DNA from: Macrostomum lignano
Lineage: Eukaryota
Direction: 5' to 3'
DNA length: 64,000 nucleotides
Assembly: GCA_002269645.1 (NCBI GenBank)
Contig: NIVC01000172.1
Coordinates: 582,558-646,557 of the forward strand
Translations under genes and position numbers: made by a program
Shown here: in pieces, positions 7,201 to 64,000 of the stretch
How positions within the stretch are numbered: the first letter of the stretch is position 1
How the letters are laid out: each line of letters opens with the position of its first letter
Notes under the pieces: generated by a model
The model's input: only the letters and a program-made list of their open reading frames with translations
The model's database searches: none
Told to the model about the DNA's origin: nothing

Positions 7201-10200
7201 CTAATCTCCATTCCCTACCCTCTCCTAATCTCCATACCCTCTCCTAATCTCCTACTCTCTCCTAATCTCCCTACCTCCTAATCTCCCTTCCTTACCCTCT
7301 CCCAATCTCCCTTCCCTACCCTCTCCCAATCTCCCTTCCCTACCCTCTCCTAGTCTCCTTCCCTACCCTCCCAATCTCCCTTCTCTACCCTCTCCCAATC
7401 TCCCTTCCCTACCCTCTCCTAATCTCCCTTCCCTATCCTCTCCTAATCTCCCTAACCTCTCCTAATCTCCCTACCCTCTACTAATATCCATACCCTCTCC
7501 TAATCTCCCTACTCTCTCCTAATCTCCCTACCCTCCTAATCTCCCTTCCTTACCTCTCCTAATCTCCCTTCCCTACCTCTCCTAATCTCCCTTCCCTACC
7601 CTCTCCTAATCTCCATACCCTCTCCTAATCTTCCTACTCTCTCCTAATCTCCCTACCCTCCTAATCTCCCTTCCTTACCCTCTCCTAATCTCCCTTCCCT
7701 ACCCTCTCCCAATCTCCCTTCCCTACCCTCTCCCAATCTCCCTACCCTCTCCTAATTTCCCCACTCTCTCCTAATCTCCCTACCCTCCTAATCTCCCTTC
7801 CCTACCCTCTCCCAATCTCCCTTCCCTACCCTCTCCCAATCTCCCTTCCCTACCCTCTCCTAATCTCCCTTCCCTACCCTCTCCTAATCTCCCTTCCCTA
7901 CCCTCTCTCAATCTCCCTTCCCTACCCTCTCCTAATCTCCCTTCCCTACCCTCTCCCAATCTCCCTTCCCTACCCTCTCCTAATCTCCCTTCCCTACCCT
8001 CTCCTAATCTCCCTTCCCTACCCTCTCCTAATCTCCCTACTCTCTCCTAATCTCCCTTCCCTACCCTCTCCTAATCTCCCTTCCCTACCCTCTCCTAATC
8101 TCCCTTCCCTACCCTCTCCTAATCTTCCTTCCCTACCCTCTCCCAATCTCATTTCCCTACCCTCTCCTAATCTCCCTTCCCTACCCTCTCCCAATCTCCC
8201 TTCCCTACCCTCTCCTAATCTCCCTTCCCTACCCTCTCCTAATCTCCCTTCCCTACCCTCTCCCAATCTCCCTTCCCTACCCTCTCCCAATCTCCCTACC
8301 CTCTCCTAATTTCCCCACTCTCTCCTAATCTCCCTACCCTCCTAATCTCCCTTCCCTACCCTCTCCCAATCTCCCTTCCCTACCCTCTCCCAATCTCCCT
8401 TCCCTACCCTCTCCTAATCTCCCTTCCCTACCCTCTCCCAATCTCCCTTCTCTACCCTCTCCCAATCTCCCTTCCCTACCCTCTCCTAATCTCCCTTCCC
8501 TACCCTCTCCTAATCTCCCTAACCTCTCCTAATCTCCCTACCCTCTACTAATATCCATACCCTCTCCTAATCTCCCTACTCTCTCCTAATCTCCCTACCC
8601 TCCTAATCTCCCTTCCTTACCCTCTCCTAATCTCCCTTCCCTACCCTCTCCTAATCTCCCTTCCCTACCCTCTCCTAATCTCCATACCCTCTCCTAATCT
8701 CCCTACTCTCTCCTAATCTCCCTACCCTCCTAATCTCCCTTCCTTACCCTCTCCTAATCTCCCTTCCTTACCCTCTCCTAATCTCCCTTCCCTACCCTCT
8801 CCTAATCTCCATTCCCTACCCTCTCCTAATCTCCATACCCTCTCCTAATCTCCCTACTCTCTCCTAATCTCCCTACCCTCCTAATCTCCCTTCCTTACCC
8901 TCTCCTAATCTCCCTTCCCTACCCTCTCCCAATCTCCCTTCCCTACCCTCTCCCAATCTCCCTACCCTCTCCTAATTTCCCCACTCTCTCCTAATCTCCC
9001 TACCCTCCTAATCTCCCTTCCCTACCCTCTCCTAATCTCCATTCCCTACCCTCTCCTAATCTCCATACCCTCTCCTAATCTCCCTACTCTCTCCTAATCT
9101 CCCTACCCTCCTAATCTCCCTTCCTTACCCTCTCCCAATCTCCCTTCCCTACCCTCTCCCAATCTCCCTTCCCTACCCTCTCCTAGTCTCCCTTCCCTAC
9201 CCTCTCCCAATCTCCCTTCTCTACCCTCTCCCAATCTCCCTTCCCTACCCTCTCCTTATCTCCCTTCCCTACCCTCTCCTAATCTCCCTAACCTCTCCTA
9301 ATCTCCCTACCCTCTACTAATATCCATACCCTCTCCTAATCTCCCTACTCTCTCCTAATCTCCCTACCCTCCTAATCTCCCTTCCTTACCCTCTCCTAAT
9401 CTCCCTTCCCTACCCTCTCCTAATCTCCCTTCCCTACCCTCTCCTAATCTCCATACCCTCTCCTAATCTTCCTACTCTCTCCTAATTTCCCTACCCTCCT
9501 AATCTCCCTTCCTTACCCTCTCCTAATCTCCCTTCCCTACCCTCTCCCAATCTCCCTTCCCTACCCTCTCCCAATCTCCCTACCCTCTCCTAATTTCCCC
9601 ACTCTCTCCTAATCTCCCTACCCTCCTAATCTCCCTTCCCTACCCTCTCCCAATCTCCCTTCCCTACCCTCTCCCAATCTCCCTTCCCTACCCTCTCCTA
9701 ATCTCCCTTCCCTACCCTCTCCTAATCTCCCTTCCCTACCCTCTCTCAATCTCCCTTCCCTACCCTCTCCTAATCTCCCTTCCCTACCCTCTCCCAATCT
9801 CCCTTCCCTACCCTCTCCTAATCTCCCTTCCCTACCCTCTCCTAATCTCCCTTCCCTACCCTCTCCTAATCTCCATACCCTCTCCCAATCTCCCTTCCCT
9901 ACCCTCTCCCAATCTCCCTACCCTCTCCTAATTTCCCCACTCTCTCCTAATCTCCCTACCCTCCTAATCTCCCTTCCCTACCCTCTCCCAATCTCCCTTC
10001 CCTACCCTCTCCCAATCTCCCTTCCCTACCCTCTCCTAATCTCCCTTCCCTACCCTCTCCTAATCTCCCTTCCCTACCCTCTCTCAATCTCCCTTCCCTA
10101 CCCTCTCCTAATCTCCCTTCCCTACCCTCTCCCAATCTCCCTTCCCTACCCTCTCCTAATCTCCCTTCCCTACCCTCTCCTAATCTCCCTTCCCTACCCT

Positions 10201-10470
10201 CTCCTAATCTCCATACCCTCTCCCAATCTCCCTTCCCTACCCTCTCCCAATCTTCCTTCCCTACCCTCTCCCAATCTCCCTTCCCTACCCTCTCCTAATC
10301 TTCCTTCCCTACCCTCTCCCAATCTCCCTACCCTCTCCTAATCTCCCTACTCTCTCCTAATCTCCCTACCCTCCTAATCTCCCTTCCTTACCCTCTCCTA
10401 ATCTCCCTTCCCTACCCTCTCCCAATCTCCCTACCCTCTGCTAATCTCCCTACCCTCTCCCAATCTCCCC
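4276..10470. repeat. 23-bp pyrimidine-rich minisatellite (CTCTCCTAATCTCCCTTCCCTAC-type) with higher-order periodicity
   Basis: About 6.2 kb tandem array with short variant units and recurring marker variants. Confidence 0.98.
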
Positions 10471-11094
10471 CCTTCCTCTTTTCTCGACACTCTGACTTCA
10501 CAATTGCCTCCCATTATCGAGGCCACGAGGGTTCCAAATGTTTATCCAAATACGAATTATAGATTCTCACCACCAGTCCAACCACCAGCAAAGCCTAATT
10601 TATTGCACCTTCCACGCTCCCCAGTTGTAAAAATATTCGCCCAAAAATAGCAGCGTCTTACCCCAGCAACAGGTGGCAACAAATGCCAAAGTTTCCACTG
10701 TCTCCATGCGGAATTACCCACCCACCCCGCCTCCCTCAAGCCGAATTCGAGCGAGGCCTGTCGCCAACCTGCACAAATACGAGCCGCGGACAAAGTTGGC
10801 ATCCCATATTTCCCCTCGATTTTTGCCCCCAACCTGCCAGGTGGCCTCAAAGTCTTCCCGCTTTGTTCGAAATATCGCATAAGCACTTCTGTCGCCTACC
10901 CGATCAACACGAACATCTCACACAGCTGACGACTATCTATATGATAATTGGGAACCCTGGCACCCACAACCCCAGCGCTGAGGCAATTCTGCCCATTCAC
11001 CTGATTTCTGAGCACACACAAGCGCGCCAATACTGCACGCAGGCACGCGCTCACACACACGCTCACACAGGGTCTTAATCATCAGGTGTGTACA

Positions 11095-11165
11095 TAATCG
11101 AACGGAATCGAACCTAGGGTCGTGGGCGCGATAATCGAACGCATTTTCCGTAGAGAGCTGCTCTG
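11095..11165 (-). mobile_element. Degenerate tRNA-derived SINE-like head
   Basis: Perfect B-box GGTTCGATTCC on the minus strand, preceded by a tRNA-like segment (GCGTTCGATTATCGCGCCCACGACCC). A-box is poor and there is no cloverleaf. Confidence 0.35.

Positions 11166-11209: not shown

Positions 11210-11273
<64 letters not shown>
11210..11273. repeat. (GA)n microsatellite
   Basis: About 30 GA units. Confidence 0.97.
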
Positions 11274-11275
<2 letters not shown>

Positions 11276-11380
11276 GGCCTCACCGCTCTCAGCGTCCCAT
11301 TTCACGAACAGCGGATATGATGATGACGAAGTCTTGCTGGGACATTTCGACTTCAGAAAATCATCTGAATCAAGATTCAG

Positions 11381-14300
11381 ATGATGCTTGGCAAGATTCT
11401 GCACCTCCACGAAGCGTGCCGTCAACACGCGGTGCCAAGCGGGCAACCGGAGCAACCCGGTTGGCAAAGCAGAATCGGGGGGGGGAGAGAGGCCCGTAGC
11501 CTCGGCGTAACAGCCGCGGTCTATGGGCAAACCTCCTCGCAACAGAGTGGCTTGGACCTAACCGACCCAGGCACCTCTCGAAACAACAGTAAGGTTGAAA
11601 GCTTTGCCGAAAGTGAGAGAGAGAGTGAGGAACTGCTGCGGAAAATATCAAAAAAAAACAAAAAAAAGAAGGAGCATGAAGCGAACAAGGAAGAGAGTAA
11701 TTGCACGTACCCAGAAAGCAAGGAAAGGCGAAGGGCTGAAATCAGCAGAGCGCTCGAGACCATCGAAAAGAACCCAGGACCGAGGCGTCCAGCACAAAAG
11801 ACGGCACGGAAGCTCAGACGAACCACACGACGAAAAAAGGTACGAGATAGGAAAGCGAGAGAGAAGGCCAGGAGGGCAAATGAGAGGTGGCACAATAACG
11901 ACATAAAGCTAGCGACGTGGAATATGCGCAGAGCGAACGTAGGAAGCGGAAGGTTCGGCGAGGTCGTTAAGTACGCGATAGGAAAGGGATGGGACGTCAC
12001 CCTCCTATCCGAACTTGACACACCTGGCGTTGGCATCAGAAGCTACCATCACAGAGAAGCAGAGATGCACCTAGTCCACTCCCAGAAGGTGGGAATGCTT
12101 CTGGGAGAAACAGCCTGGACAATGTGGAACGAAACTGGGAGGAAGATGCACCCGATGAAACGAACACTTGCGCTGGAAATAGGCGGAGTGATCCTGATAG
12201 CCGTATACCAACCGGTCAAGAAGGGTAAAGAGTACGAGGAAGAAGTGGATGAGATCCGAGAAGAAATCGAAAGGATGCTGAACACCTTTGCAAAGAAGGC
12301 TGTACTAATCATCGGTGGAGATTTCAACGCCAGCGTTGGGAGCGGAGTGCACCGTCTCTCGAGCACAGGCCGTTATGGAATCGGACCAACGAACCAACAG
12401 GGTGAAGACCTACTTCTTTGGCTAGAAAGCCTAGGCCTGGCATGGGCGAGCACCTTCTACAGGCAGAAGAAGCAAGGCACCTGGCGGAACCCGAGGTCAC
12501 ACCAATGGTACGAGATTGACGGCTTCATCACCAAGAAAGAGCAGAGACACCGGATCATCGGGAGCATCAGGACCGACCACGATCCGAATCACCATACGAG
12601 GTCCGACCACCTACCGAAGGTCATCACCATGAAGAGAAGATTCGCGGAGAGATGCGCGGAACCAACCAGGAAGTATCCAAAAAACCAAAAAAACGAAATC
12701 GCCTGGGACCGGCTCCGCGATGTCGGCGTACGCGAACTATACAGAAATAAGACGGAGGAAGTGCTAGCTGGAAAGGGCGAGACCGACTGGGAAACGACGA
12801 AACAAACGATGCTTGAAGCCGCGAGAGAAATCTGCGGCCCAAAGACGAGACAGACGAACCCGTGGATGGTAGGGCACGAAGAAGAGCTGGCAGAACTTAA
12901 CAAAGAAGTGGAGCACGCCCTGAGCGCCCGCAACCGAGTTAAGAAGTCACCCGAAGGGACCCTAACAGTAGAAGAGCGGACGGTGGCCTTGACCCGAGCC
13001 ACACAAGGGCTGAAAGAGAAGCGGGGAAAGCAGAAGAAGAAACTCCAAGAGTGGATGGAACAGTGGTGGATGGAGATTGCCGAAGAGTGCAAGCGGAACT
13101 GCGACACGGGAAACGTGGCTGGGATGTACGACTGTTTGCGGAAGATGGGCAGGAACACAAAGCAAAATGAGAACAACAGCAGAACAGTACCACTGTTCAC
13201 GGCGGAAGACTTCAAGGAACACCTGTCAAAGATCCAGGAGCAACGGTTCGAGAACGACCAGGAGGAAATGCTCAATCTAATTAGGTCAGCCCCAAAGCCA
13301 AGCGTAGACAAGGCTACGATAGAGGAAGCCAATGACCGGCTGTCCAGACCACTAACAAACAAAGAGATCGACGACGAAATCAAAAAGATCAAAGACGGGG
13401 CCCCGGGCTTAGACGGCATCCGAATGCGCTACATCACCAGCGCGTGCGCAATGGCCCAAGCGGAGGTCCGGAAAGTAGTGCACTACATCTGGAACAACCC
13501 AGCGGACACCTGGGAGGAGGACCAGAAAGTAGGTGTAATCATGCCACTCCACAAGAAAGGCGATCGGACGAACCTCAATAATTTCAGAGGGATCTGCCTC
13601 CTACCAGTCGCAAGCAGGATACTCGCTCGGATACTGGCGACGAGGCTGAGCTCATGGACGGAGAACATGGGTCTGCTAGACGACAACCAGTTCGGTTTCC
13701 GGAGCGGCCGGTCCACTATGGATGCGACCCAGATCATACTCAGACTGAACGAGGACGCCGAGAAGATCAGAGAGAGCCCAGAATGGGCAGAGTCGATGGA
13801 TACCAGCCTAGTCTTGCTAGACCTTAAGAAGGCCTACCCGCGGGTAAACAAGCCGGCTCTTTGGGAACTGCTGAAACATCAGCACATGCCGGAGCGCACG
13901 ATAAAAAAGCTGGCAGACCTGCACGAGTACACCGCGTACACGGTACGGTGCGGCGCAGAGACAAGTTCCGAATTTTACCCACAACGCGGGCTGAGAGAAG
14001 GCTGCGCCACATCGCCTATCCTCTTCAACATCTATCACCAGACGGCGATACGGATAGCAAAAGAGAGGCGCATGGAAAAAGCGAAGAACACCGGGGCCGA
14101 ATGCGGAATCAAGTGGGTTTGCCGACCGGGCAAATGCTTACCGCCTAAAAAGATGGGAGGTTACAACGAAGAAGCGGCGGAGATAACAATCACAGAAGTA
14201 CTGTTCGCTGACGACACCACTATTGTCGGGGGATCCGAGGAAATCGAGCAAGGGACGAGAACCGTCATCGAGACCATCGGAATCCTAGAAGAACGGACGA

Positions 14301-15508
14301 ACGATGAGAAGGAAGAGCGAGCTAAGCTAGGAACACCTGAGAGTCAGAACATCCGGATACTGGGCACCTGGATCGGCAGAAAGCAGGACACCGCCCAGCG
14401 GCTGCAGAGAGCTGCCAAAGCGTGGGCGGGAGTCAAATGCATGCTACGCAAAACACGACTAAGCAAACGCACCCAAGCTAGGATCATAGAGACCTGTGTT
14501 GAGAGCACGATGCTCTTCAATGCAGGCGCCCGGCCCTTCCACAAGTCGGAAATTAAGCGGATGCAGCAGGCAATGGACCGTCGTTATCGGTACGTGTGGA
14601 GCAGCAAGACCGAACCACCGCTAAAAGAAATGGAGAGAAAAAAAGTGAACATGTGGGACGTGCGGAACGAACTGCGGGTCCGAAGCATCGGCGCCAAAGT
14701 CGAATCGGCCCACTGGCGCAGGCTAGGCCACGTACTCAGACTCCCGGATACCAGCACCGTCAAAAGATGTGTCCTCGGCTGGAGCAAGAAGCTGACTACC
14801 ATCAAGAAAGCGCGGAAGAGAAGGCAGACCATCATCTCGGTATGGAGAAAGCTACTGCGCACGGCAGAAATCGATGAGCTGGAGGTCGAAAGGCTGGTGA
14901 CCGATAGAGAGGCTTGGAGAAAGAAGTTACGCATCAGGGAAAGAGCGCTGGAGGAGAGCGAGAGGAAGAAAGGAAAGAAAGCAGAGACGACTGAGGAAGA
15001 AACAGCACAGGAAAGAGAAGCCGGAGAAGTGGAATCGGAGCTGACCGGGTACAGGTGCAATTACGAGAACTGCGGGAAGGTGTGCGCGTCGAGAGCCGGG
15101 TTAGCCGTACACCAACGGAGGATACACCATCAATTTACGAAGACACCGCTGCCGTGCCTAAAGTGCAACGCTACCTTCTTCACGGAGGCGACAAGAAAAA
15201 ACCACCAGAAGAGGTGCGGAGGAGAGGAGCGATCGGCGAAAGAAGTCCACTGCGGAGAGTGCAACAAGTGGATAAGCAAGTCCAACCACGCGCGGCATAG
15301 GAAACGGTGCAAGGAGAACGGAAGGAAACCAGAGGCGGGCGCGACACCGGACGAGAGGGCAGAAGAAGCAGCAGTACCAACGGGGAGAGGCCAGCAGACG
15401 ACGGGGATTACGGCGCGGATCTACAAGAGCGCCAGAGCTCCGTGCCCGGACTGCGGGAGGATGCTGGCCCGCACGAACATGGCCAGACATCGAAAGACCT
15501 GCCAGTGA
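11381..15508 (+). CDS. RTE-like polyprotein: APE endonuclease, reverse transcriptase, C-terminal zinc fingers
   Basis: APE motifs ATWN, LLSE, GGDFNA, EIDGF, SDH. RT motifs FRGICLL, QFGFRSGRST, DLKKAYPRV, GLREGCATSPILFN, LFADD. RTE-type thumb WRRLGHVLRL. No stops over 1375 codons; the true start is uncertain. Confidence 0.95.
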   Translation: MMLGKILHLHEACRQHAVPSGQPEQPGWQSRIGGGREARSLGVTAAVYGQTSSQQSGLDLTDPGTSRNNSKVESFAESERESEELLRKISKKNKKKKEHEANKEESNCTYPESKERRRAEISRALETIEKNPGPRRPAQKTARKLRRTTRRKKVRDRKAREKARRANERWHNNDIKLATWNMRRANVGSGRFGEVVKYAIGKGWDVTLLSELDTPGVGIRSYHHREAEMHLVHSQKVGMLLGETAWTMWNETGRKMHPMKRTLALEIGGVILIAVYQPVKKGKEYEEEVDEIREEIERMLNTFAKKAVLIIGGDFNASVGSGVHRLSSTGRYGIGPTNQQGEDLLLWLESLGLAWASTFYRQKKQGTWRNPRSHQWYEIDGFITKKEQRHRIIGSIRTDHDPNHHTRSDHLPKVITMKRRFAERCAEPTRKYPKNQKNEIAWDRLRDVGVRELYRNKTEEVLAGKGETDWETTKQTMLEAAREICGPKTRQTNPWMVGHEEELAELNKEVEHALSARNRVKKSPEGTLTVEERTVALTRATQGLKEKRGKQKKKLQEWMEQWWMEIAEECKRNCDTGNVAGMYDCLRKMGRNTKQNENNSRTVPLFTAEDFKEHLSKIQEQRFENDQEEMLNLIRSAPKPSVDKATIEEANDRLSRPLTNKEIDDEIKKIKDGAPGLDGIRMRYITSACAMAQAEVRKVVHYIWNNPADTWEEDQKVGVIMPLHKKGDRTNLNNFRGICLLPVASRILARILATRLSSWTENMGLLDDNQFGFRSGRSTMDATQIILRLNEDAEKIRESPEWAESMDTSLVLLDLKKAYPRVNKPALWELLKHQHMPERTIKKLADLHEYTAYTVRCGAETSSEFYPQRGLREGCATSPILFNIYHQTAIRIAKERRMEKAKNTGAECGIKWVCRPGKCLPPKKMGGYNEEAAEITITEVLFADDTTIVGGSEEIEQGTRTVIETIGILEERTNDEKEERAKLGTPESQNIRILGTWIGRKQDTAQRLQRAAKAWAGVKCMLRKTRLSKRTQARIIETCVESTMLFNAGARPFHKSEIKRMQQAMDRRYRYVWSSKTEPPLKEMERKKVNMWDVRNELRVRSIGAKVESAHWRRLGHVLRLPDTSTVKRCVLGWSKKLTTIKKARKRRQTIISVWRKLLRTAEIDELEVERLVTDREAWRKKLRIRERALEESERKKGKKAETTEEETAQEREAGEVESELTGYRCNYENCGKVCASRAGLAVHQRRIHHQFTKTPLPCLKCNATFFTEATRKNHQKRCGGEERSAKEVHCGECNKWISKSNHARHRKRCKENGRKPEAGATPDERAEEAAVPTGRGQQTTGITARIYKSARAPCPDCGRMLARTNMARHRKTCQ
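11386..11476 (+). ncRNA. HDV-like self-cleaving ribozyme (predicted)
   Basis: P1 GCTTGGC/GCCAAGC (11386-92/11434-40); P2 GATTCTGC/GCAGAATC (11395-402/11469-76); P3 ACC/GGT; P1.1 CC(11407-8)/GG(11441-2); P4 CAACCGG/CCGGTTG; catalytic C11465 followed by AAA. Confidence 0.85.
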
Positions 15509-17647
15509 GTCGGCGGCAGAGCGTCCACGCCGCGAGGCGAGAAAAGGACTGAAGAAGAAGAAGAAGAAGACTTCAGAAAATTTACGCTGGCAATGCAATA
15601 AAAGGAAGGAATTATGAGAATAATAATCATATGTTATTCTCTTCCCTCTTCCTTCCTTCCGTGAGCGCAGAGCCTATGCAGACTTTTTCTCTCCTCCGCA
15701 GGAATCCCTCTCGCACCTTCGCCCTTCATCGGTCGCGCAGCGTGAGGTCCCGGGGAATCCTCTTAATGAGGCTCCCCCCGCCGCCGGCGTCCCTCCCAAC
15801 CTCACAGAGCCGCGGCGGCTGGTGAAGCAGAGGATGAAGGAAGCTGAAGTGGAGACGGCCGCCGGAGTCTCTTCTTGCGGGAGAGACGGTCGCGCTGTGT
15901 TTTGACAGCTTGGAAAGAAAATATTTGAAATGCGCACCAGTTTCTGGCGGGCGGGCAAGTAACCGCGCGGCCGTAATTGCTTTTGTGCCGCATCCGGGAT
16001 GGGAGAAGCCGCTGCCCTTGTTACTATGGAACAGGGGGGGGGGGTGGGAGGTCGAGTTTCAAGGGATGCCATGGGAAAACAGGAACAAGAGCGGAGAGAA
16101 ATTATCCTCTTCCAGCTGGCTTCCCGGCGTAAAAGAACCTTGTTGCACAAAGCTGGGTCTTCCTGCATGGCTCTGCTGCCGGCCCCTCATTGGAGGGGGG
16201 GGGGGTTTAAGCAATTTTCGCTACAAAAAACTGCTGGACAAGGAAGCTGAGGAAGGGGAGGGGGTAAAGACGAGTGTCAAAGCGGCCTCGCTTACCAAAG
16301 TGCGGGACGCCGCTTTCCAGTTCGGCGGACTGGGTAGAATTTACCGACTGCTTTGCAGACAGGAGAGTTACTTAGAAAATATCCCTGGCTTCCATCTCGA
16401 TGAAAGCCGGCCGGGTTTATAGTGCGGCACTGGAATTCCGTGGGTGCAAAATGCAGCTCGTATGGCTGGGCCTGCAGTTCCCCTGCCGAAATTGCTGATC
16501 GCCAGGTCGACTCCGATGACACCTTCAGCTGTTGTTGGGGACTGCGGCGTCCATCAGCCTTGCCCGTCACTTTTCCCTGCCGAACCCAACAAGCCGCTCA
16601 GGGTGCAGCTGCAGTCCATCCCTCTCACCTAGCGCTAAGCCGGGGCAGAGAAGGAAGAGGGTCAAGAGTGCCAAATGAGACAGGACAGTCGATATCGCAT
16701 ATCGTGCGTCTGCTGCGAATCATTTGGGACATTCTATGAGATTAAAGAGGTACGAGTTTCACGATAGCGCGATAGCGGCGGAGCTTCTGGTTAGAATCAA
16801 ACTAAGAAGCAGCTGCAAGCAAAAAAATTTCAAGATGGCAAGCAACAAAGCAGAGGGGGGCGCAGCCCAGTGGTCCATCGCTCTGATGTGCCAGCGGCCC
16901 AGGCTCGATTCCAAGTGCAGTCACATTAATTTGGGGCTGAATTGGAATCTCGGCTTGGCTCTGCTCGTGCAATCAGTGCCCTTGAGGATCAACCCCCAAG
17001 GCGCAGTGAAGTGTACATGTCTAACGATAAAATAAAGTTAGGGCCGCTGTACACTCCTGTGTGAGTGTGTGCCTGTGCGTATGACTGCGTACGTATCCGC
17101 GCGCTTGTGTGCCTGCTCAGGGGAGTCGGCGGAATGGGCAGTAATGCCTCTCGCCGGTTGTGTGACAATGTCGCCAGGGTGCACACAGCCAGGAAGCAAT
17201 ATTGCTTAAGTTCGGAAGCAGTCAGGCTGAGGACTGGAAGCAGGAAGGTTGATGATGGAAACAAAAAGGCTCAAGACTGGAAGTGGACACAACATAAGAA
17301 CGGAAGCAGAAAGAATCTGCATTGACAACCAAATCGAAAAAGTTTCAAGACTAAAATTTCGATACTTTAGCTGAACAAACAATTTCATTAAACTAAGCCC
17401 CATCAAATTTTTGGGCAATTTGACATAACAACTGTAATTTTTATCCCACAGTCGGATGAATGCACCATCGGCTACGCTTAAAAGTTTTTTTTCAAATTCA
17501 CTGCGCAGTTTTGAATTGGGCTCTCTGGACGAACACAACTGCATCAGTGCATGAATTCTGTTGATGCACAGTTCGAAATTTCATGCGAGAGATTGTGATG
17601 ATACTGCGTTTTAGGGGATGGGGAGAATTTTTAGTGCGGTATTTCAA

Positions 17648-19140
17648 GATTCCTAGATGGGGATTATCCAAGATAGGGGATTCCTAGATGGGGATTATCC
17701 AAGAAAGGGGATTTCTAGATGAGGATTATCCAAGAAAGGGGATTTCTAGATGAGAATTATCCAAGAAAGGGGATTTCTAGATGGGGATTATCCAAGAAAG
17801 GGGATTTCTAGATGAGGATTATCCAAGATAGGGGATTTCTAGATGAGGATTATCCAAGAAAGGGGATTTCTAGATGAGGATTATCCAAGAATGGGGATTT
17901 CTAGATGGGGATTATCCAAGAATGGGGATTTCTAGATGGGGATTATCCAAGAATGGGGATTTCTAGATGGGGATTATCCAAGATAGGGGATTTCTAGATG
18001 AGGATTATCCAAGAAAGGGGATTTCTAGATGAAAATTATCCAAGAAAGGGGATTTCTAGATGGGGATTATCCAAGAAAGGGGATTTCTAGATGAGGATTA
18101 TCCAAGAAAGGGGATTTCTAGATGGGGATTATCCAAGATAGGGGATTTCTAGATGGGGATTATCCAAGAATGGGGATTTCTAGATGGGGATTATCCAAGA
18201 AAGGGGATTTCTAGATGAGAATTATCCAAGAAAGGGGATTTCTAGATGGGGATTATCCAAGAAAGGGGATTTCTAGATGAGGATTATCCAAGATAGGGGA
18301 TTCCTAGATGGGGATTATCCAAGAAAGGGGATTTCTAGATGGGGATTATCCAAGAATGGGGATTTCTAGATGAGGATTATCCAAGATAGGGGATTCCTAG
18401 ATGGGGATTATCCAAGAAAGGGGATTTCTAGATGAAAATTATCCAAGAAAGGGGATTTCTAGATGAAAATTATCCAAGAAAGGGGATTTCTAGATGGGGA
18501 TTATCCAAGAAAGGGGATTTCTAGATGAGAATTATCCAAGATAGGGGATTCCTAGATGGGGATTATCCAAGAAAGGGGATTTCTAGATGGGGATTATCCA
18601 AGATAGGGGATTTCTAGATGGGGATTATCCAAGAAAGGGGATTTCTAGATGAGGATTATCCAAGAATGGGGATTTCTAGATGAGGATTATCCAAGATAGG
18701 GGATTCCTAGATGAGGATTATCCAAGAAAGGGGATTTCTAGATGGGGATTATCCAAGAAAGGGGATTTCTAGATGAGGATTATCCAAGATAGGGGATTCC
18801 TAGATGAGGATTATCCAAGAAAGGGGATTTCTAGATGGGGATTATCCAAGAAAGGGGATTTCTAGATGAGGATTATCCAAGAAAAGGGATTTCTAGATGG
18901 GGATTATCCAAGAAAGGGGATTTCTAGATGAGGATTATCCAAGATAGGGGATTCCTAGATGAGGATTATCCAAAAAAAGGGGATTTCTAGATGAGGATTA
19001 TCCAAGATAGGGGATTTCTAGATGAGGATTATCCAAGATAGCGGATTCCTAGATGGGGATTATCCAAGAAAAGGGACAATCTAAGAAAGGGAATTCCTAG
19101 ATAGGGATAATCTAAGAAAGGGAATTCCTAGATGGGGAAC
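17648..19140. repeat. 31-bp minisatellite (GGGGATTTCTAGATGRGGATTATCCAAGAAA)
   Basis: About 48 tandem units, each made of two related 15/16-bp halves. Confidence 0.97.
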
Positions 19141-21304: not shown

Positions 21305-21353
21305 CTGGAATTTTGAAATGAGAAGAAATTGTAGGGTCCATCTAATGTCAATA

Positions 21354-21700
21354 GGGATCATCTGACTCAAACAGGGATTCATCTGATTCAAGCAGGGATT
21401 CATCTGACTCAAGCAGGGATTCATCTGACTCAAGCAGGGATTCGTCTGACTCTAACAGGTATTCATCTGACTCAAACAGGGATTCGTCTGACTCTAACAG
21501 GGATTCATCTGACTCAAACAGGGATTCGTCTGACTCTAACAGGGATTCATCTGACTCTAACAGGGATTCATCTGACTCTAACAGGGATTCATCTGACTCG
21601 AACAGGGATTCGTCTGACTCGAACAGGGATTCGTCTGACTCAAACAGGGATTCATCTGACTCAAGCAGGGATTCATCTGACTCAAGCAGGGATTCGTAAG
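21354..21700. repeat. 21-bp intronic minisatellite (GGGATTCATCTGACTCAAACA)
   Basis: About 16 units inside intron 2 of the LamG gene. Confidence 0.95.
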
Positions 21701-26579: not shown

Positions 26580-28379
26580 TTACATTTTAACAACTCCAAG
26601 CATTGTTCGCAGTTGCATGAACTTGTCCTTCGATAACGGCTTAGTAAGCGCATCTGCAACCATATCGCCAGTTGGACAGTAGACCACCCGAATAGTCCCA
26701 TTGCTGACGGCTTCACGAATGAAGTGATGTCTGATATCAATGTGCTTTGTCCGTCGGCTTCCAGCAGAATTCTCAGAAAGAGCAATGGTTCTTTGGTTGT
26801 CCTCGTAGATCACAGTGGGTCGCTCAGATCCTGATCTTTCAAGATCACTTAGTAGCCGCCGTAGCCACATGGCTTCTTGTGCTGCAGAGCTCAGCGCTAC
26901 GTACTCAGCTTCCGTTGTCGAGAGTGAGACAGTTGATTGCTTCTTGCTAAGCCAGCTGATAGCGCCACCAGATAGCTTAAACACGATGCCAGAGGTGGAA
27001 TGTCGATCATCTACGTTACTCGCCCAGTCTGCATCAGAATAGCCGATCAAGTTCTCTACACTAGAGTTGTACTCTAGGCCAAAGTCGATTGTTCCCTTTA
27101 GGTATCGGAAGATTCGTTTTACTGCGGTTAGATGTATCTCTCTTGGTTTGTTGTTGAACTTGGAGACAACTCCCACTGCATACGAGATGTCTGGACGTGT
27201 AGCAGTTGCTGCATAGAGCAAGCTTCCAACCATTGACTGGTAAACTGTAGAGTCAACTAGCTTGCTGCCCTCGTCGTATTTGGCTAGTTTTACGTTGGGA
27301 TCCATCGGAGTTAAGGCTGGGTTCGCCTCTGCAAGTCCATAGCGTTCAAGCAGTTTGGTTATGTACTGCTTCTGATTAAGCTTGATACAGCGGTCCTCCT
27401 TGTTTGCTTGGATGTTGACCCCTAGACAGTAGTGCAACTCGCCCATGTCTTTCATCTTGAACCTTTTGGAAAGTTCATCCTTGATTTGTTGCATTTCCAC
27501 CAGACTCTTCGTAATTAGTATTAGGTCGTCAACGTACACAGCTAGGGCCGTGAGATCCTCCCTTTTCCTAATGAAGACACCGCTGTCGGCTGAGCTTTCC
27601 TCGAAGTTAATTCTGGTTAGGTAGTCACAAAAGGCTTTGTTCCAACAGCGGGGCGCTTGCTTAAGTCCATAAAGCGACTTCTTTAACTTGCAGACCAGCT
27701 CTTCCTCTCCTGGCTTGACGAAACCGGGTGGCTGCTCCATGTAAATTTCTTCGCACAATTCGCCGTTCAAAAAGGCAGTTACAACGTCCATCTGGTGAAC
27801 GTGTAATCCATGTTTAGCCGCTAATGCCAACATTGCACGAACTGATGGGAATTTTACAACTGGCGCGAAAGTCTCTTCATAATCAATGCCGAACTTCTGT
27901 GAATAGCCCTTGGCTACAAGTCTTCCCTTAAAACGATCTACCTTGCCATCACCGTCATACTTGACCTTAAAGATCCATTTACATCCGATTGCCTTGCGTC
28001 CTTCAGGTAGTCGTACCAGATCCCAGGTTTCATTCTCCATCAGGGAATTATATTCTGAGTCAGCGGCAGCTTTCCATTGCTTCGCACAGTCACCTTTCAT
28101 GGCTTCGTCGATCGTTTTCGGTTCGACAATTTCGGTCATTCTGAACGCAAAGTGTTCGGTTTCAGATGCCACTTTTGCACCTTCATATTTGAGACGGTCA
28201 GGGGCTCTCCTTTCACGTTGAGGATATCGCTTCTGATCAGTTTCTGTCGACTGTTCCTGTTCTTGACCTGGTGTCTCTTCTGTCATATTGGGCTCATCAA
28301 GCTCCAAGTTGAACCAGCTCGCGTCCTTGTCTCTTGCTCTATTCTTTGAGGTTCCAAAATCAGTCTCGTTGAACACCAC
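26580..28379 (-). CDS. Copia pol, RT plus RNase H part
   Basis: WKAAADSEYNSL..KGRLVAKGYSQ..QMDVVTAFLNG..LYGLKQAPR..VYVDDL; GYSDADWA..YEDNQ..ADALTK. Confidence 0.95.
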   Translation of the reverse strand: MVFNETDFGTSKNRARDKDASWFNLELDEPNMTEETPGQEQEQSTETDQKRYPQRERRAPDRLKYEGAKVASETEHFAFRMTEIVEPKTIDEAMKGDCAKQWKAAADSEYNSLMENETWDLVRLPEGRKAIGCKWIFKVKYDGDGKVDRFKGRLVAKGYSQKFGIDYEETFAPVVKFPSVRAMLALAAKHGLHVHQMDVVTAFLNGELCEEIYMEQPPGFVKPGEEELVCKLKKSLYGLKQAPRCWNKAFCDYLTRINFEESSADSGVFIRKREDLTALAVYVDDLILITKSLVEMQQIKDELSKRFKMKDMGELHYCLGVNIQANKEDRCIKLNQKQYITKLLERYGLAEANPALTPMDPNVKLAKYDEGSKLVDSTVYQSMVGSLLYAATATRPDISYAVGVVSKFNNKPREIHLTAVKRIFRYLKGTIDFGLEYNSSVENLIGYSDADWASNVDDRHSTSGIVFKLSGGAISWLSKKQSTVSLSTTEAEYVALSSAAQEAMWLRRLLSDLERSGSERPTVIYEDNQRTIALSENSAGSRRTKHIDIRHHFIREAVSNGTIRVVYCPTGDMVADALTKPLSKDKFMQLRTMLGVVKM

Positions 28380-30547
28380 ATCATAGCGGATGACTGTCTG
28401 ACTGTCTTTCTCAACCTTTCATCAAACAGTCTGTAGCTTCTTCCATCCGTATTGTAGCCAACAAACCGTTGCTTTTCGGCCTTCTTGTCTAGCTTCTTTC
28501 GCTTCACATCTGGTATGTGGGCATAGGCTACGCAGCCGAAAACACGAAAGTGCCCAACGTTAGGTTTGCGCCCATACCAACGCTGGTACGGCGTCATTTG
28601 CGGAGTAAGAGCAGTCGTCACGACTCTATTTCGCACATAAGCTGCGGTGTTTACTGCTTCTGCCCAGAACTGGTTGCTTACTCCAGAATGGGCCATCATT
28701 GTGCGGGCTGATTCAACGAGAGTGCGATTAATCCGTTCAGCAACGCCATTTTGCTGAGGTGTATGAGCCACGGTAGTCTCATGCCGAATGCCCTTCTGCT
28801 CCAGGAATTTTGTAAATTGGCTTGATGCATACTCTCCGCCGCCGTCAGTTCGCAGTGATTTGATATTGAGTCCTGTTTCTGTTGTAACCATGGCCTCAAA
28901 CTTCTTAAACTTATCAAGCACTTCTGACCTTTGTCGCATGAAGAAAACCTTAACGCAGCGTGAGTAGTCATCAATAAAGGTGACGAAGTAATTGTTTCCA
29001 CCAAATGACTCTGTTTGCATAGGACCGCATATGTCGCTGTGAATTAGTTGTAGCCTTTCGGTAGAGCGGATTTCGGAAATCGAACTATGAGGCTTGCAGT
29101 GCATTTTGCCCTCGATACATCCTTCACAGAAGTCAACACATGCAGTCTGCAACTTGGAGATGCCACTCACGAGTTGGTCTTTGCTCATTTGATTTAGTTG
29201 GTGTTCGTTGACATGACCAAGGCGCTGGTGCCATAAAGTTGCACTTGTGTCTGGTGAATCAGCATTTGCTACTGCCGCAGTGTTCGCCGGCAATTTTACT
29301 TCACAGTCAAGCTGGTACATTCTGTGAACAACAGATCCCTTTCCAACAAGGAATCCATCCTTGTTGCGAATCCAGCATTTAGAGTGACCGAACTGTATCA
29401 CTTTATCCTTTGCTGCTGCTGCTCGAACACTAAACAGATTGCACGACAGCTGAGGCACTAGAAGTACATCTGTTACAGCTGTCTTGAAACGCTTGCCATG
29501 TGGCAGGAGCATAATGAGTTTTACCTGACCACTGCCGCAGGCCTCGACTGTTCGACTATCACCTAGGCTGACCCGTTCAGGTCGTCCAAACTGCTTATAG
29601 TTGACTAGTAGCTCTCTAGAGTATGTCATGTGGCAGGACGCTCCAGAGTCAATTATCCAGGTGGATATGTCAGAGCTGGTCTTCGCGGGCGACACAAAAA
29701 ATGTCTCGTTGCAGCTACTTTTAGGTCCGTCGTCATCAAGCGAGGTTTCAGCGATGTCCCGGGTCGCGGCACCATCGGCTGTTTTGGTGACATACCGTGC
29801 AGGTCCTTGGTCCTTGAAGAACTTTTTCGCTCCTCCTGAACGACAGTCTCGGGCAAAGTGACCCATCTTTCCGCAATTGAAACATTTGATAGCACGACGT
29901 GGCAGACCTTGGCCTTTTTGGGTCTTCAGTGCAGACTCTCCACCCTGTGTACCACCAGACCCTCGCTCACTTAATTCACTCCGCTTTTGCTCCTCGTTGA
30001 TGAGTGCTTGGTGAACCATCTGCAGTGTAAGATCATCACCGCGAGCTTCCAAGGCAGTAACCAAGGTAGAGTAGCTCTCAGGCAGGCTGCTGAGCAGCAT
30101 GACCACTTGGTCCTCTTCACTGACGGGTGCGTTGATAGAGGCCAGTTTGTCGGTCAGCTCCTTCATATGGCGTATATGATCCTGTACGCGGGTCCCTTCC
30201 CTCATCTGCAGCCGGAAAAGCTGTTTCTTCAAATAGATCTTATTCGCAGTTGATTCTCGTTCGAAGTGCTGTTGGAGAGCTTGCCACATACGATGTGGAT
30301 CTTCGCCACACGAAGTTATTAGATAGATTAACTCTTTCTTGATTGAAAGAACGATCACTGCAGCAGCTCTCTGTTGCTGCTCTCGAAATTCGTTTTCTTG
30401 CTCCTGAGTGGCATCCTCTGCGAGAATTACGGAACCGTCGACGACTCCCCAGAGCTTCCTCGCTATAAGACAGAACTTGATCTGGATCTTCCAGGTAGTC
30501 CAGTTTCCGCTTCCCGGCTTGTCGACTTGAAACTTATCATCCGCCAT
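28283..30547 (-). CDS. Copia gag-protease-integrase part (frameshifted at about 28400)
   Basis: CCHC knuckle CFNCGKMGHFARDC; protease WIIDSGASCHM; HHCC LWHQRLGH..CEGC; DDE HSDICGP..LRTDGGGEY..QQNGVAER. Confidence 0.95.
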   Translation of the reverse strand: MADDKFQVDKPGSGNWTTWKIQIKFCLIARKLWGVVDGSVILAEDATQEQENEFREQQQRAAAVIVLSIKKELIYLITSCGEDPHRMWQALQQHFERESTANKIYLKKQLFRLQMREGTRVQDHIRHMKELTDKLASINAPVSEEDQVVMLLSSLPESYSTLVTALEARGDDLTLQMVHQALINEEQKRSELSERGSGGTQGGESALKTQKGQGLPRRAIKCFNCGKMGHFARDCRSGGAKKFFKDQGPARYVTKTADGAATRDIAETSLDDDGPKSSCNETFFVSPAKTSSDISTWIIDSGASCHMTYSRELLVNYKQFGRPERVSLGDSRTVEACGSGQVKLIMLLPHGKRFKTAVTDVLLVPQLSCNLFSVRAAAAKDKVIQFGHSKCWIRNKDGFLVGKGSVVHRMYQLDCEVKLPANTAAVANADSPDTSATLWHQRLGHVNEHQLNQMSKDQLVSGISKLQTACVDFCEGCIEGKMHCKPHSSISEIRSTERLQLIHSDICGPMQTESFGGNNYFVTFIDDYSRCVKVFFMRQRSEVLDKFKKFEAMVTTETGLNIKSLRTDGGGEYASSQFTKFLEQKGIRHETTVAHTPQQNGVAERINRTLVESARTMMAHSGVSNQFWAEAVNTAAYVRNRVVTTALTPQMTPYQRWYGRKPNVGHFRVFGCVAYAHIPDVKRKKLDKKAEKQRFVGYNTDGRSYRLFDERLRKTVRQSSAMMWCSTRLILEPQRIEQETRTRAGSTWSLMSPI

Positions 30548-63230: not shown

Positions 63231-63236
63231 TATTAC

Positions 63237-63446
63237 CTGGACCAGCGGCTCCAAGGCGGTCAGCGCAGCGGAGACGTCCAGCTCTCGCAGGGCGGACTCC
63301 AGCTGCGACAGGCAGTAGCGCAGCTGCATACCCCGGGACCAATGGCACAGCTCCCGCCGCAGCATCAGCTGATTGAAGCAGTGGCCGCACAGCCAGCGCA
63401 AAGTTTGCTCAACCAGCTGGGCGAGGGCCTCGTCCGGCAGTCCGGC
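63237..63446 (-). CDS. MYO5: Myosin V-like tail, penultimate exon (DIL domain)
   Basis: QLVEQTLRWLCGHCFNQLMLRRELCHWSRGMQLRYCLSQLE..LEPLVQ is the DIL signature; donor GTAATA; the 5' acceptor could be slightly further upstream. Confidence 0.87.
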
Positions 63447-64000
63447 CTGAAATTGCGCAATAGCAGAGATTCTCTGGTGAGCACAGAGATCAGAGACCTG
63501 CACCGGGCAGCTGCCAATGCCCCAATGAGAACGGTACCCAGGCCAAGAAGCGTCCCAGAGTCGCTTGCATCGCCACAGAGTGGTTGCAGGTAACACAGGT
63601 AAGATAGGAAAGAATTGACTCCAGACGACTCTAAAACGACGAGATGTCACGGTAAAGGTCGCCTAAAAAGTCGTCAAAGAGTTGCTTAAGGCGTTTGTCT
63701 GCGTTTCTTTAATTACTCTGGGGCCGTTGAGCCGTATCTGAGGCGTGCTGGAGTCGCTGAGTTGCGTCTGAAGCGCATCTGCGTCACTTTATGAATCAGA
63801 ATCGCATTTCAGATTTTTAACAACTCTGTTTAGTCTACTGGAGTCAGTAGAAAGTTAAGCGCTAACACAACTACTCTTGGGAGACTTTTTCGCGATTCTT
63901 TTAAACCATTCTGCAAGTCACGTGATGCCCTAGTGACTCAACAGTTGCCTTTCCGTCGCATTGCAGTCGTTCGAGTCGTTAAAAACTCACGAGAGTCGCC

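What the first reader, a model, noticed from the sequence alone, without database searches (positions are those of the whole stretch)
11386..11476. HDV-like ribozyme at the LINE 5' end with an extra hairpin inside loop L3
Seen: every element of the nested double pseudoknot pairs perfectly. P1 is 7 bp, P2 8 bp, P3 3 bp and P4 7 bp; P1.1 is CC/GG; GGGCAA follows P1 as in genomic HDV; C11465-A-A-A corresponds to C75-G-A-A. L3 is 25 nt rather than about 7-8. TCCACGAA keeps the U20/C21/C22/G25 positions, then a 5-bp hairpin GCGTG-ccgtcaa-CACGC (11414-11430) is inserted where HDV has the extruded U27. Known: HDV-like ribozymes process R2, RTE and L1Tc transcripts, and their usual insertions are in J1/2, P1 and P4. 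Inference: an L3-insertion variant that length-restricted motif searches would miss; I cannot confirm it is unreported.
Basis: partly seen in the sequence, partly recalled or inferred. Interest (0 to 1): 0.88.

Follow-up and report, generated by a model that had tools for sequence, protein, structure and literature searches.

The report
HDV-like LINE ribozyme with L3 hairpin
A self-cleaving RNA fold of the hepatitis-delta type sits at the start of an intact jumping gene; related jumping genes carry the same fold, but only this copy has a 16-17-base hairpin inside the catalytic loop, and whether it still cuts is untested.

Summary
P1, P2, P3, P1.1 and P4 all pair perfectly at 11386-11476, and the 25-nt L3 holds a 5-bp hairpin.

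It is not chance. A permissive descriptor finds only this site in the window, against 0.013 hits per shuffled window.

It is also homologous to something real. Related LINEs (39-50% protein identity, from public assemblies) carry the same fold at their 5' ends. They show compensatory changes in P1 and P3, and entirely different but still paired P2 and P4. A covariance model built only from those relatives finds one hit in the window, exactly here (30.2 bits, E about 4e-5).

All the relatives have an L3 of 7-9 nt. The hairpin is therefore a 16-17-nt insertion seen only in this copy.

Activity is unknown, and three things argue for caution:
- No sibling copy was available.
- 24 nt lie between the target-site duplication and the cleavage site.
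- The start codon conserved in J1/2 of the relatives is AAG here, so the only in-frame AUGs are upstream of or across the cleavage site.

Verdict: a real HDV-like ribozyme family, with one unusual and possibly crippled L3 variant.

The parts
11349..11361 (+). 5' copy of the target-site duplication, GACTTCAGAAAAT
   Evidence: It is the longest word shared between the two flanks (13 nt). 0 of 500 shuffles reach 13 (sequence).
11362..11385 (+). 24-nt filler or leader between the TSD and the cleavage site. Together with A11360-T11361 it forms a perfect 12-bp palindrome, ATCATCTGAATC-aa-GATTCAGATGAT. It ends in GATGAT and holds the only in-frame AUGs (11381, 11384).
   Evidence: the hairpin is predicted in the MFE fold. 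Relatives have (ATG)n or (GAT)n at the same place.
11386..11392 (+). P1 5' strand, GCTTGGC. The predicted cleavage is 5' of G11386.
   Evidence: Pairs with 11434-11440. Identical to P1 of L023, and covaries in L002, L001 and L147.
11393..11394 (+). J1/2 (AA). The codon AAG at 11393-11395 stands where relatives have the in-frame start codon AUG.
   Evidence: Alignment; ORFs.
11395..11402 (+). P2 5' strand, GATTCTGC
   Evidence: 8 Watson-Crick pairs with 11469-11476.
11403..11405 (+). P3 5' strand, ACC
   Evidence: Pairs with GGT 11431-11433. Compensatory ACT/AGT in L023 and L087, and GCC/GGC in L147.
11406..11413 (+). L3 core, TCCACGAA. C11407-C11408 form P1.1; T11406 and G11411 are the conserved U and G.
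   Evidence: Aligns to the L3 of RF00094 and of model R1. TCCACG is identical in L023.
11414..11430 (+). Inserted hairpin GCGTG-ccgtcaa-CACGC at the 3' end of L3. Its 3' arm runs straight into P3'.
   Evidence: Absent from all relatives, whose L3 is 7-9 nt. Modelled as a 19-versus-2 or 19-versus-3 insert. -6.6 kcal/mol on its own.
11431..11433 (+). P3 3' strand, GGT
11434..11440 (+). P1 3' strand, GCCAAGC
11441..11442 (+). P1.1 3' strand, GG (start of GGGCAA)
   Evidence: GG is invariant in all relatives.
11444..11463 (+). P4 hairpin, CAACCGG-agcaac-CCGGTTG
   Evidence: Relatives have a hairpin of different sequence here.
11464..11468 (+). J4/2, G-C-AAA, with C11465 at the position of the catalytic cytosine
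   Evidence: Aligns with the invariant ACAAAA of the relatives.
11469..11476 (+). P2 3' strand, GCAGAATC
11381..15508 (+). Single intact LINE ORF, 1375 codons, read through the ribozyme. It holds a 2A-like motif IEKNPGP (11762-11782), an APE endonuclease (about 11903-12616), a reverse transcriptase (13550-14368, FADD at 14204-14215), and one C2H2 plus three C2HC fingers (15056-15502).
15509..15568 (+). Short 3' UTR and a (GAA)6 tail (15551-15568)
   Evidence: Relatives end in (GAA)n(GAT)n.
15569..15581 (+). 3' copy of the target-site duplication, GACTTCAGAAAAT

Best explanation
This is a genuine member of an HDV-like self-cleaving ribozyme family that marks the 5' end of a clade of single-ORF LINEs. 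These elements carry a 2A-like motif, an APE endonuclease, a reverse transcriptase, C-terminal zinc fingers and a (GAA)n tail.

In the family, the ribozyme folds as the transcript is made. The J4/2 cytosine (here C11465), held by L3 and P1.1, catalyses cleavage 5' of the first P1 base (here G11386). This frees the element RNA from whatever was transcribed upstream. The ORF starts inside the ribozyme.

The window's copy carries a 16-17-nt quasi-palindromic insertion at the 3' end of L3. By eye it looks like a local duplication of CACG..GTGCC. It folds into its own 5-bp hairpin and leaves the eight core L3 bases, P3, P1.1 and the cytosine unchanged. I judge it most likely that the RNA can still adopt the active fold and cleave, perhaps more slowly, with the hairpin projecting from the spot where canonical ribozymes extrude a base.

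What is shown: the fold, its homology, the covariation in the family, and that the hairpin is an insertion.
What is inferred: the catalysis, the cleavage site, and tolerance of the hairpin.

Separate confidences: about 0.9 that this is a homologous family member carrying an insertion; about 0.5 that this version is active. The score below is for the whole statement, including activity.
For: - All helices are perfect and the core bases are in place.
- The permissive descriptor hits only this site in the window, against 0.013 per shuffled window.
- RF00094 aligns end to end with a single large insert in L3.
- Relatives L023/L082, L087, L002, L148, L001, L025 and L146, plus a tentative match in L147, carry the same architecture at their 5' ends.
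- On the manual structural table there are compensatory changes at P1 positions 1, 3, 4, 6 and 7 and at P3 positions 1 and 3. P2 and P4 have unrelated sequences that still pair.
- On the five-sequence alignment, 100% of cells pair, 4 pairs change on both sides, and pairing falls to 25-43% when partners are slid.
- Model R1, built without the window, finds one hit in 128 kb searched, at 11386-11477: 30.2 bits, E about 4e-5, full length.
- The copy is young: intact 1375-codon ORF and a perfect 13-bp TSD.
- The hairpin is stable on its own (-6.6 kcal/mol). It adds 6.6 kcal/mol to the nested P1+P3+P4 fold without touching core bases.
- Two A residues link the conserved L3 G to the hairpin, which leaves room for it to swing out. 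This last point is my own geometric reasoning, not a computation.
Against: - There is no sibling copy in the window or in any searchable collection. The hairpin therefore has no covariation, and it may be private to this one copy.
- L3 is the catalytic core, and its length is 7-9 nt in every relative.
- The insert also allows a competing 7-bp helix, GUGCCGU/GCGGUGC (-8.7 kcal/mol), that would tie up P3' and the start of P1'.
- The copy contains 24 nt 5' of the cleavage site inside its TSD. This would be simplest if its template RNA had not been cleaved.
- The start codon conserved in J1/2 of the relatives is AAG here. The only in-frame AUGs before the endonuclease lie at 11381 and 11384, so cleavage would cut the ORF off from them.
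- The scores are below Rfam gathering thresholds.
Confidence: 0.5

Rival explanations
1. It is the same homologous ribozyme, but the L3 insertion has crippled or strongly slowed it. This copy, or its small lineage, is propagated and translated from uncleaved RNA. The upstream leader, ending in AUGAUG, supplies the start codon that J1/2 has lost. On this reading the hairpin is a mutational scar from fold-back or duplication, not an adaptation.
For: - 24 nt 5' of the cleavage site are retained inside the TSD.
- The J1/2 AUG conserved in L023, L082, L087, L002, L148 and L001 is AAG here. The only in-frame AUGs are 5' of or across the cleavage site, with none again until codon 182 inside the endonuclease.
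- Every relative has an L3 of 7-9 nt.
- A competing -8.7 kcal/mol helix is created by the insert.
- Both the insert and the leader have a direct-inverted-direct layout, which is typical of template-switch errors (by eye).
Against: - All other ribozyme elements remain perfect in this copy, and all core bases are intact.
- The leader could equally be filler added at the 5' junction after cleavage. Extra bases at such junctions are described for R2 (PMC3774820). Relatives show tail-to-head junctions with (GAT)n directly abutting the cleavage site (L082).
- In-frame near-cognate start codons (CUG 11399, GUG 11432) exist downstream of the cleavage site.
- AAG may be a single copying error private to this copy.
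Confidence: 0.38
2. The true catalytic loop is the hairpin's terminal loop CCGUCAA, closing an extended P3 (ACC/GGU plus GCGUG/CACGC). On this reading TCCACGAA is only an internal bulge.
For: The loop is 7 nt long and starts with CC, which could pair with G11441-G11442.
Against: - TCCACG aligns base for base with the L3 of every relative and of RF00094.
- The terminal loop lacks the conserved U...G pair.
- P3 is 3 bp and directly abuts P2 and P1' in all family members. An 8-bp interrupted P3 would move the loop away from P1 and J4/2.
Confidence: 0.03
3. It is a chance resemblance, or sequence conserved only because it encodes the N-terminus of the ORF, with no RNA structure involved.
For: The region is inside the open reading frame, and Rfam scores are below threshold.
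Against: - Only 2 descriptor hits in 150 shuffles.
- It is the single R1 hit in the window, at E about 4e-5.
- Compensatory double changes keep the pairing, and P2 and P4 are replaced by different paired sequences. Coding constraint does not explain this.
Confidence: 0.01

Closest known systems
L1TcRz / Pr77 HDV-like ribozyme of the L1Tc/ingi LINEs of trypanosomatids (PMC3185411, PMC3383444, PMC4035085)
   Same: An HDV-like ribozyme in the first ~80 nt of a single-ORF APE-type LINE that cleaves at the element's first base. The ORF has a 2A-like sequence just before the endonuclease (PMC3708506). From my memory, it also has C-terminal C2H2 fingers.
   Different: - Clade membership of the window's element was not tested, because no reference LINE set was on hand.
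- The window's ribozyme has a 25-nt L3 with a hairpin.
- In the relatives the start codon lies in J1/2.
- The tails are (GAA)n(GAT)n.
- Promoter activity of the Pr77 kind is unknown here.
R2/R4 retrotransposon ribozymes (PMC3774820)
   Same: - An HDV-like fold at the 5' end that releases the element from a co-transcript.
- P1 of 6-7 bp, P2 of at least 5 bp, a variable P4, and few conserved core bases.
- Extra bases at 5' junctions are described.
- The Nasonia vitripennis R2 ribozyme is noted to have unusual spacing of the conserved L3 bases.
   Different: - R2 uses a restriction-like endonuclease and inserts in 28S rDNA.
- No helix inside L3 is described there.
RTE, Baggins and other drz ribozymes found by structure-based search (Webb 2009; Ruminski 2011; summarised in PMC6765202)
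   Same: They are proposed to process 5' ends and to help cap-independent translation start in promoter-less LINEs.
   Different: Those papers were not readable here. From memory, their descriptors fix L3 at about 7-8 nt, so such a variant would not have been returned.
drz-Agam-2 ribozymes with a structured J1/2 domain, P1.2 (PMC4908430)
   Same: A natural HDV-like ribozyme with an added peripheral helix that leaves the core unchanged.
   Different: That helix sits in J1/2, between the distal ends of P1 and P2, and it speeds up cleavage. Here the helix is inside the catalytic loop L3, and its effect is unknown.
Hepatitis delta virus ribozyme model, Rfam RF00094
   Same: Full-length alignment. 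The P1, P3 and P4 order, the L3 core, the GGGCAA after P1 and the J4/2 C all match.
   Different: 26.4 bits against a gathering score of 50. There are 19 nt where the model has 2 in L3. P4 is short. The context is a retrotransposon, not a viral genome.

Membership tests
HDV-like self-cleaving ribozymes | Nested double pseudoknot in the order P1-P2-P3-L3-P3'-P1'-P1.1'-P4-J4/2-P2' | tested here: met
   All helices are perfect at 11386-11476. It is the only descriptor hit in the window.
HDV-like self-cleaving ribozymes | Cytosine in J4/2 a few bases before P2', and conserved L3 bases (a U, the CC of P1.1, and a G) | tested here: met
   C11465 aligns with the invariant C of ACAAAA in the relatives. 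TCCACG aligns with the L3 of the models.
HDV-like self-cleaving ribozymes | Short L3, about 7-9 nt, closing a 3-bp P3 | tested here: not met
   L3 is 25 nt. Relatives have 7-9 nt, and the Rfam model has 8.
HDV-like self-cleaving ribozymes | Helices supported by covariation among homologues | tested here: met
   P1, P3 and P1.1 pair in 100% of cells, with 4 pairs changed on both sides. P2 and P4 are replaced by other paired sequences. The inserted hairpin itself has no homologue, so it has no covariation.
HDV-like self-cleaving ribozymes | Score at or above the curated Rfam threshold (RF00094, RF02682) | tested here: not met
   26.4 bits against 50, and 22.5 against 44. No hits at gathering scores. 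The canonical-L3 relative L023 is not detected at all, so these models cover this clade poorly.
HDV-like self-cleaving ribozymes | Mg2+-dependent self-cleavage 5' of the first P1 base | not testable with these tools
   This needs a transcription and cleavage assay, or mapping of RNA 5' ends.
5'-end ribozyme family of this LINE clade (model R1, built from L023, L087, L002, L148, L001) | Significant full-length match to a model that excludes the window | tested here: met
   One hit in the window, 11386-11477, 30.2 bits, E about 4e-5, model positions 1-74. Family members score 55-93 bits.
5'-end ribozyme family of this LINE clade (model R1, built from L023, L087, L002, L148, L001) | In-frame AUG in J1/2 that opens the ORF | tested here: not met
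   ATG is invariant in the five relatives, and ORFs run from it. The window has AAG at 11393-11395.
5'-end ribozyme family of this LINE clade (model R1, built from L023, L087, L002, L148, L001) | Location at the 5' end of a homologous APE+RT ORF, sense strand | tested here: met
   The ORF starts within the ribozyme. tblastn shows 39% identity to L023 over residues 106-1373. The TSD lies 24 nt upstream.
Single-ORF APE-type LINEs with an N-terminal 2A-like sequence (Odon et al. 2013, PMC3708506) | An ..IExNPGP motif just upstream of the endonuclease domain, and no ORF1 | tested here: met
   LETIEKNPGP at 11762-11782, with T in place of the usual D. DIEKNPGP is present in L023 and L082. Skipping activity was not tested.
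L1Tc/ingi clade | RT phylogeny places the element inside the clade | not tested
   No reference set of LINE reverse transcriptases was available. The resemblance in architecture is only a lead.

The most novel reading that the evidence does not exclude
The hairpin-bearing RNA is an active ribozyme. That would make it the first natural HDV-like ribozyme with a helix (a "P3.1") inside the catalytic loop L3. Because the only AUGs of the ORF sit just 5' of the cleavage site, the balance between cleaving and not cleaving would decide whether a transcript is translated or becomes a start-codon-less template. In other words, a ribozyme-set switch between the two fates of LINE RNA.
Probability: 0.2. 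Interest if true: 0.78.

Novelty: new variant of a known kind. Interest (0 to 1): 0.55.

Why it matters
L3 is treated as the fixed heart of HDV-like ribozymes, and search descriptors and covariance models penalise any length change there. If a helix is tolerated at its 3' end, three things follow:
- Current surveys undercount these ribozymes.
- There is a new natural site for grafting sensor domains.
- The geometry of the L3 turn is more permissive than thought.

Independently of the hairpin, the work uncovers a LINE clade whose 5' ribozymes are invisible to Rfam. In it, ribozyme, start codon and 2A-like peptide overlap, which is a compact example of how promoter-less retrotransposons organise RNA processing and translation.

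If instead the insert kills activity, the copy is a natural loss-of-function mutant that still retrotransposed. That would be informative about how much these elements need cleavage.

Tried and rejected
- **Rfam at gathering scores:** no hit in the window. Rfam on relatives L002-L004 and on L023: no HDV hit. Rfam is therefore not a useful yardstick for this clade.
- **Sibling copies.** None in the window. The exact ORF product is not on record. A full-ORF protein search was swamped by low-complexity words. The RT search found nothing above 52% identity. An exact L3-plus-hairpin pattern found nothing in metagenome contigs.
- **Loose L3-insert pattern in viral contigs:** 18 hits, none of which fold, so all are chance.
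- **Clade pattern in metagenome contigs.** The scan stopped at 120 rows. Only L082 and L087 are real. L033 is a chance bacterial match.
- **My first descriptor** required P2 to abut P3, so it missed all the relatives, which have 1-2 unpaired bases there. They were found by eye in L023 and then with a relaxed scan.
- **MAFFT misaligned L147**, so it was left out of the model.
- **P2 and P4 covariation** could not be counted formally, because their registers differ between families. It was tabulated by hand instead.
- **The terminal loop as the real L3:** considered and rejected (see the rival explanations).
- **The 24-nt leader copied from elsewhere in the window:** no informative match.
- **Primary papers not held:** Webb 2009, Ruminski 2011, and Webb and Luptak 2011. 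The novelty claim therefore rests on the searchable library and on my memory.
- **Host organism:** not identified. The window is eukaryotic, with a Ty1/copia element and a DIL-domain ORF.
Full report
**1. The observation**

- P1: GCTTGGC (11386-11392) with GCCAAGC (11434-11440).
- P2: GATTCTGC (11395-11402) with GCAGAATC (11469-11476).
- P3: ACC (11403-11405) with GGT (11431-11433).
- P1.1: C11407-C11408 with G11441-G11442.
- P4: CAACCGG (11444-11450) with CCGGTTG (11457-11463).
- J4/2: G-C11465-AAA.
- L3: 25 nt, made of TCCACGAA followed by the hairpin GCGTG-ccgtcaa-CACGC (11414-11430). The 3' arm of the hairpin runs directly into P3'.

Rfam at curated thresholds reports nothing in the whole window. 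A permissive scan of 261 nt aligns RF00094 end to end at 26.4 bits (gathering 50, E 0.047), with 19 nt where the model has 2 in L3. RF02682 aligns at 22.5 bits.

A descriptor of my own required P1 of 7 bp, P2 of at least 6 bp, P3 of 3 bp, CC/GG for P1.1, P4 of at least 4 bp, a C before P2', and L3 of 6-45 nt. It finds only this site on both strands of the window, and 2 sites in 150 dinucleotide-preserving shuffles.

**2. The element around it**

The motif opens a 1375-codon ORF (11381-15508) with an APE-type endonuclease and a reverse transcriptase. The ORF also has a 2A-like motif, LETIEKNPGP, at 11762-11782, and one C2H2 plus three C2HC fingers at its end.

After a 42-nt 3' UTR comes a (GAA)6 tail (15551-15568). 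This is followed at once by GACTTCAGAAAAT (15569-15581). The same 13 bases occur at 11349-11361, and 0 of 500 shuffles reach that length. The insertion is therefore 11362-15568, it is young, and 24 nt (CATCTGAATCAAGATTCAGATGAT) separate the target-site duplication from G11386. With the last AT of the duplication, these 24 nt form a perfect 12-bp palindrome.

There is only one copy in the window.

**3. Relatives**

No close relative is in the searchable collections. The exact protein is not on record, and the best RT homologues are 49-52% identical, from eukaryote-like contigs of ENA and JGI assemblies.

Fetching the DNA of such homologues gave mostly decayed copies. In the best-preserved one, L023 (39% identity over residues 106-1373), the 5' end reads:

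(ATG)n | GCTTGGC tatg GTCTTC c ACT TCCACGCTA AGT GCCAAGT GG a CAAGATG att CATCTTG a C aaaaa GAAGAT

This is the same architecture with a 9-nt L3.

A relaxed scan, a metagenome pattern scan and further look-ups added these members:
- L082, identical to L023 over the ribozyme.
- L087, L002, L148 and L001.
- The decayed L146 and L025.
- A tentative divergent member in L147, found by eye.

**4. Structure is conserved, sequence is not**

The manual structural table shows:
- P1 position 1: GC, GU or AU.
- P1 position 3: UA or CG.
- P1 position 4: UA, CG or GU.
- P1 position 6: GC or UA.
- P1 position 7: CG or UA.
- P3 position 1: AU or GC.
- P3 position 3: CG or UA.
- P2 (for example GATTCTGC, GGTCTTCC, TGACTTC, GAAATTC, TGGTGC) and P4 are unrelated sequences that each pair with their partner.

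On the MAFFT alignment of the window with four relatives, all 60 cells of P1, P3 and P1.1 pair, and 4 pairs change on both sides. Sliding the partners drops pairing to 25-43%.

A covariance model built only from five relatives with canonical L3 (A4, R1) finds exactly one hit in the window. It lies at 11386-11477, scores 30.2 bits with E about 4e-5, and is full length, with 19 nt where the model has 3 in L3.

The window's motif is therefore a homologue of a real, structurally constrained RNA. Coding constraint cannot explain compensatory changes or the swapped helices.

**5. The hairpin is an insertion**

Every relative has an L3 of 7-9 nt: TCCACGCTA, TTCCCGTTG, TTCTCGTTG, TCCTCGCAT, TCCAAGT. 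Only the window has 25 nt.

By eye, CACGAAGCGTGCC (11408-11420) and CACGCGGTGCC (11426-11436) look like a diverged tandem duplication of the near-palindrome CACGCGGTG. That would create the GCGTG/CACGC stem as a by-product. This is an inference.

Energies:
- The hairpin alone is worth -6.6 kcal/mol.
- The nested P1+P3+P4 fold improves from -22.6 to -29.2 kcal/mol when the hairpin is included.
- The insert also permits a competing 7-bp helix, GUGCCGU/GCGGUGC (-8.7 kcal/mol). This helix would sequester P3' and the first bases of P1', and it is the one chosen in the pseudoknot-free MFE fold.

**6. Does this version work?**

In favour:
- The eight core L3 bases, P3, P1.1 and the J4/2 C are untouched.
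- All helices are perfect.
- Two A residues link the conserved L3 G to the hairpin.

Against:
- There is no second copy, so there is no test of selection on the hairpin.
- The copy carries 24 nt 5' of the cleavage site.
- The AUG that is invariant in J1/2 of the relatives, and from which their ORFs run (L023 514 codons, L082 416, L001 590), is AAG here. The frame is open with no stop for 190 codons, while the other two frames have 5 and 11 stops. The only in-frame AUGs before codon 182 are at 11381 and 11384, one upstream of the cleavage site and one across it.

Cleavage would thus orphan the ORF from its AUGs, unless a near-cognate codon (CUG 11399, GUG 11432) or a ribozyme-assisted start of the kind proposed for R2 and L1Tc (PMC6765202) is used.

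The leader does not prove non-cleavage:
- Extra bases at 5' junctions are known when cleavage is at the junction (PMC3774820).
- In relatives, (GAT)n directly abuts the cleavage site.
- The 3' tails are (GAA)n(GAT)n.
- L082 shows a tail-to-head junction.

Together these points suggest either insertion into (GAT)n or template jumps onto tails. I put activity at about even odds.

**7. Comparison with what is known**

HDV-like ribozymes at LINE 5' ends are established for R2/R4, L1Tc/ingi, RTE and Baggins (PMC3774820, PMC3185411, PMC4035085, PMC6765202).

The closest in architecture is L1Tc, which has a ribozyme in the first ~80 nt and a 2A just before the endonuclease (PMC3708506). From memory, it also has C-terminal C2H2 fingers. 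Clade membership was not tested.

Known peripheral additions are in J1/2 (the P1.2 of drz-Agam-2, PMC4908430) and in P4. The R2 survey notes only odd spacing of the L3 bases in one wasp element (PMC3774820). Searches of the held literature for an L3 insertion or hairpin in HDV-like ribozymes found nothing, but the founding descriptor papers could not be read.

**8. Verdict**

The fold and its family are real, and the family is a new member of a known kind. Rfam does not see it; even L023 gives no HDV hit.

The L3 hairpin is a genuine structural oddity, found in one young copy. It is a new variant if active, and a mutational scar if not. Cleavage assays with and without the hairpin, and a survey of sibling copies in the source genome, would settle it.

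Noticed in passing
window 11393-11395, 11381-11386; L023 2125-2127; L001 8001-8003: Relatives have an invariant in-frame AUG in J1/2 of the ribozyme, 8-9 nt after the cleavage site, and their ORFs run from it. The window has AAG there. Its only in-frame AUGs are AUGAUG, lying 5' of and across the cleavage site.
   Followed up: partly
window 11762-11782; L023 and L082 ORFs; P0121-P0134: A 2A-like ribosome-skipping motif (LETIEKNPGP in the window, DIEKNPGP or DVEKNPGP in relatives) lies between a short N-terminal peptide, which begins inside the ribozyme, and the endonuclease. This is known for single-ORF APE LINEs (PMC3708506). The pairing with a 5' HDV-like ribozyme recalls L1Tc.
   Followed up: partly
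window 11360-11385: There is a perfect 12-bp palindrome, ATCATCTGAATC-aa-GATTCAGATGAT, between the TSD and the cleavage site. Its right arm resembles the TSD (GA-TTCAGAtgAT against GACTTCAGAAAAT). The direct-inverted-direct layout suggests fold-back copying at the 5' junction. It could also insulate the ribozyme from upstream sequence.
   Followed up: partly
L023 2070-2116 and 6080-6140; L082 50-88; L002 4170-4225; L148 2215-2274; L146 about 2460-2493; L025 6000-6051 and 15870-15920: (ATG)n or (GAT)n microsatellite directly abuts the predicted cleavage site in nearly every relative. The 3' tails are (GAA)n(GAT)n, and L082 is a tail-to-head junction. This suggests targeting of (GAT)n repeats, or template jumps onto tails.
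   Followed up: partly
L001 5875-9773: In L001 the ribozyme (7993-8060) sits directly before an ORF whose match to the window's protein begins only at about residue 662, in the reverse-transcriptase part, with no endonuclease part matched (P0001). It lies just downstream of ORFs with PIF1-helicase and weak GIY-YIG hits. This is a different element architecture that reuses the same ribozyme.
   Followed up: no
L025 15921-15990: A second, divergent ribozyme-like sequence (R1 22.1 bits) follows another (ATG)n run: ACC-TCCTCGT-GGT, then GGGCAC. I could not find a P2 partner for it.
   Followed up: no
L023 2030-2290: Rfam release 15 gives no HDV-family hit, even at E up to 10, for the canonical-L3 relative. 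This whole LINE-clade ribozyme family is invisible to the current models.
   Followed up: yes
window 26580-30547 (-): A Ty1/copia-type LTR retrotransposon with gag, zinc knuckle, integrase and RVT_2 domains. ORFs up to 754 codons look largely intact.
   Followed up: no
window 9005-10437, 11210-11273, 17648-18000, 21350-21690, 48390-49310: The region is rich in tandem repeats: a 24-bp minisatellite of about 65 copies, (AG)32 just upstream of the LINE, a 31-bp repeat, and two further arrays seen through pattern matches.
   Followed up: no
window 11008-11071 and 17056-17120; 11100-11145: There is an 80% inverted match between the two sides of the LINE region. Just upstream of the (AG)n run lies a stretch ending in GGAATCGAACC, which on the minus strand reads like a tRNA T-arm. 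ARAGORN calls no tRNA. It may be a SINE or tRNA-derived remnant.
   Followed up: no
window 61620-63650 (-): A long intron-free ORF of 676 codons with a DIL domain (the myosin-V or afadin type of cargo-binding region). It is the only host-gene clue seen. The host organism was not identified.
   Followed up: no
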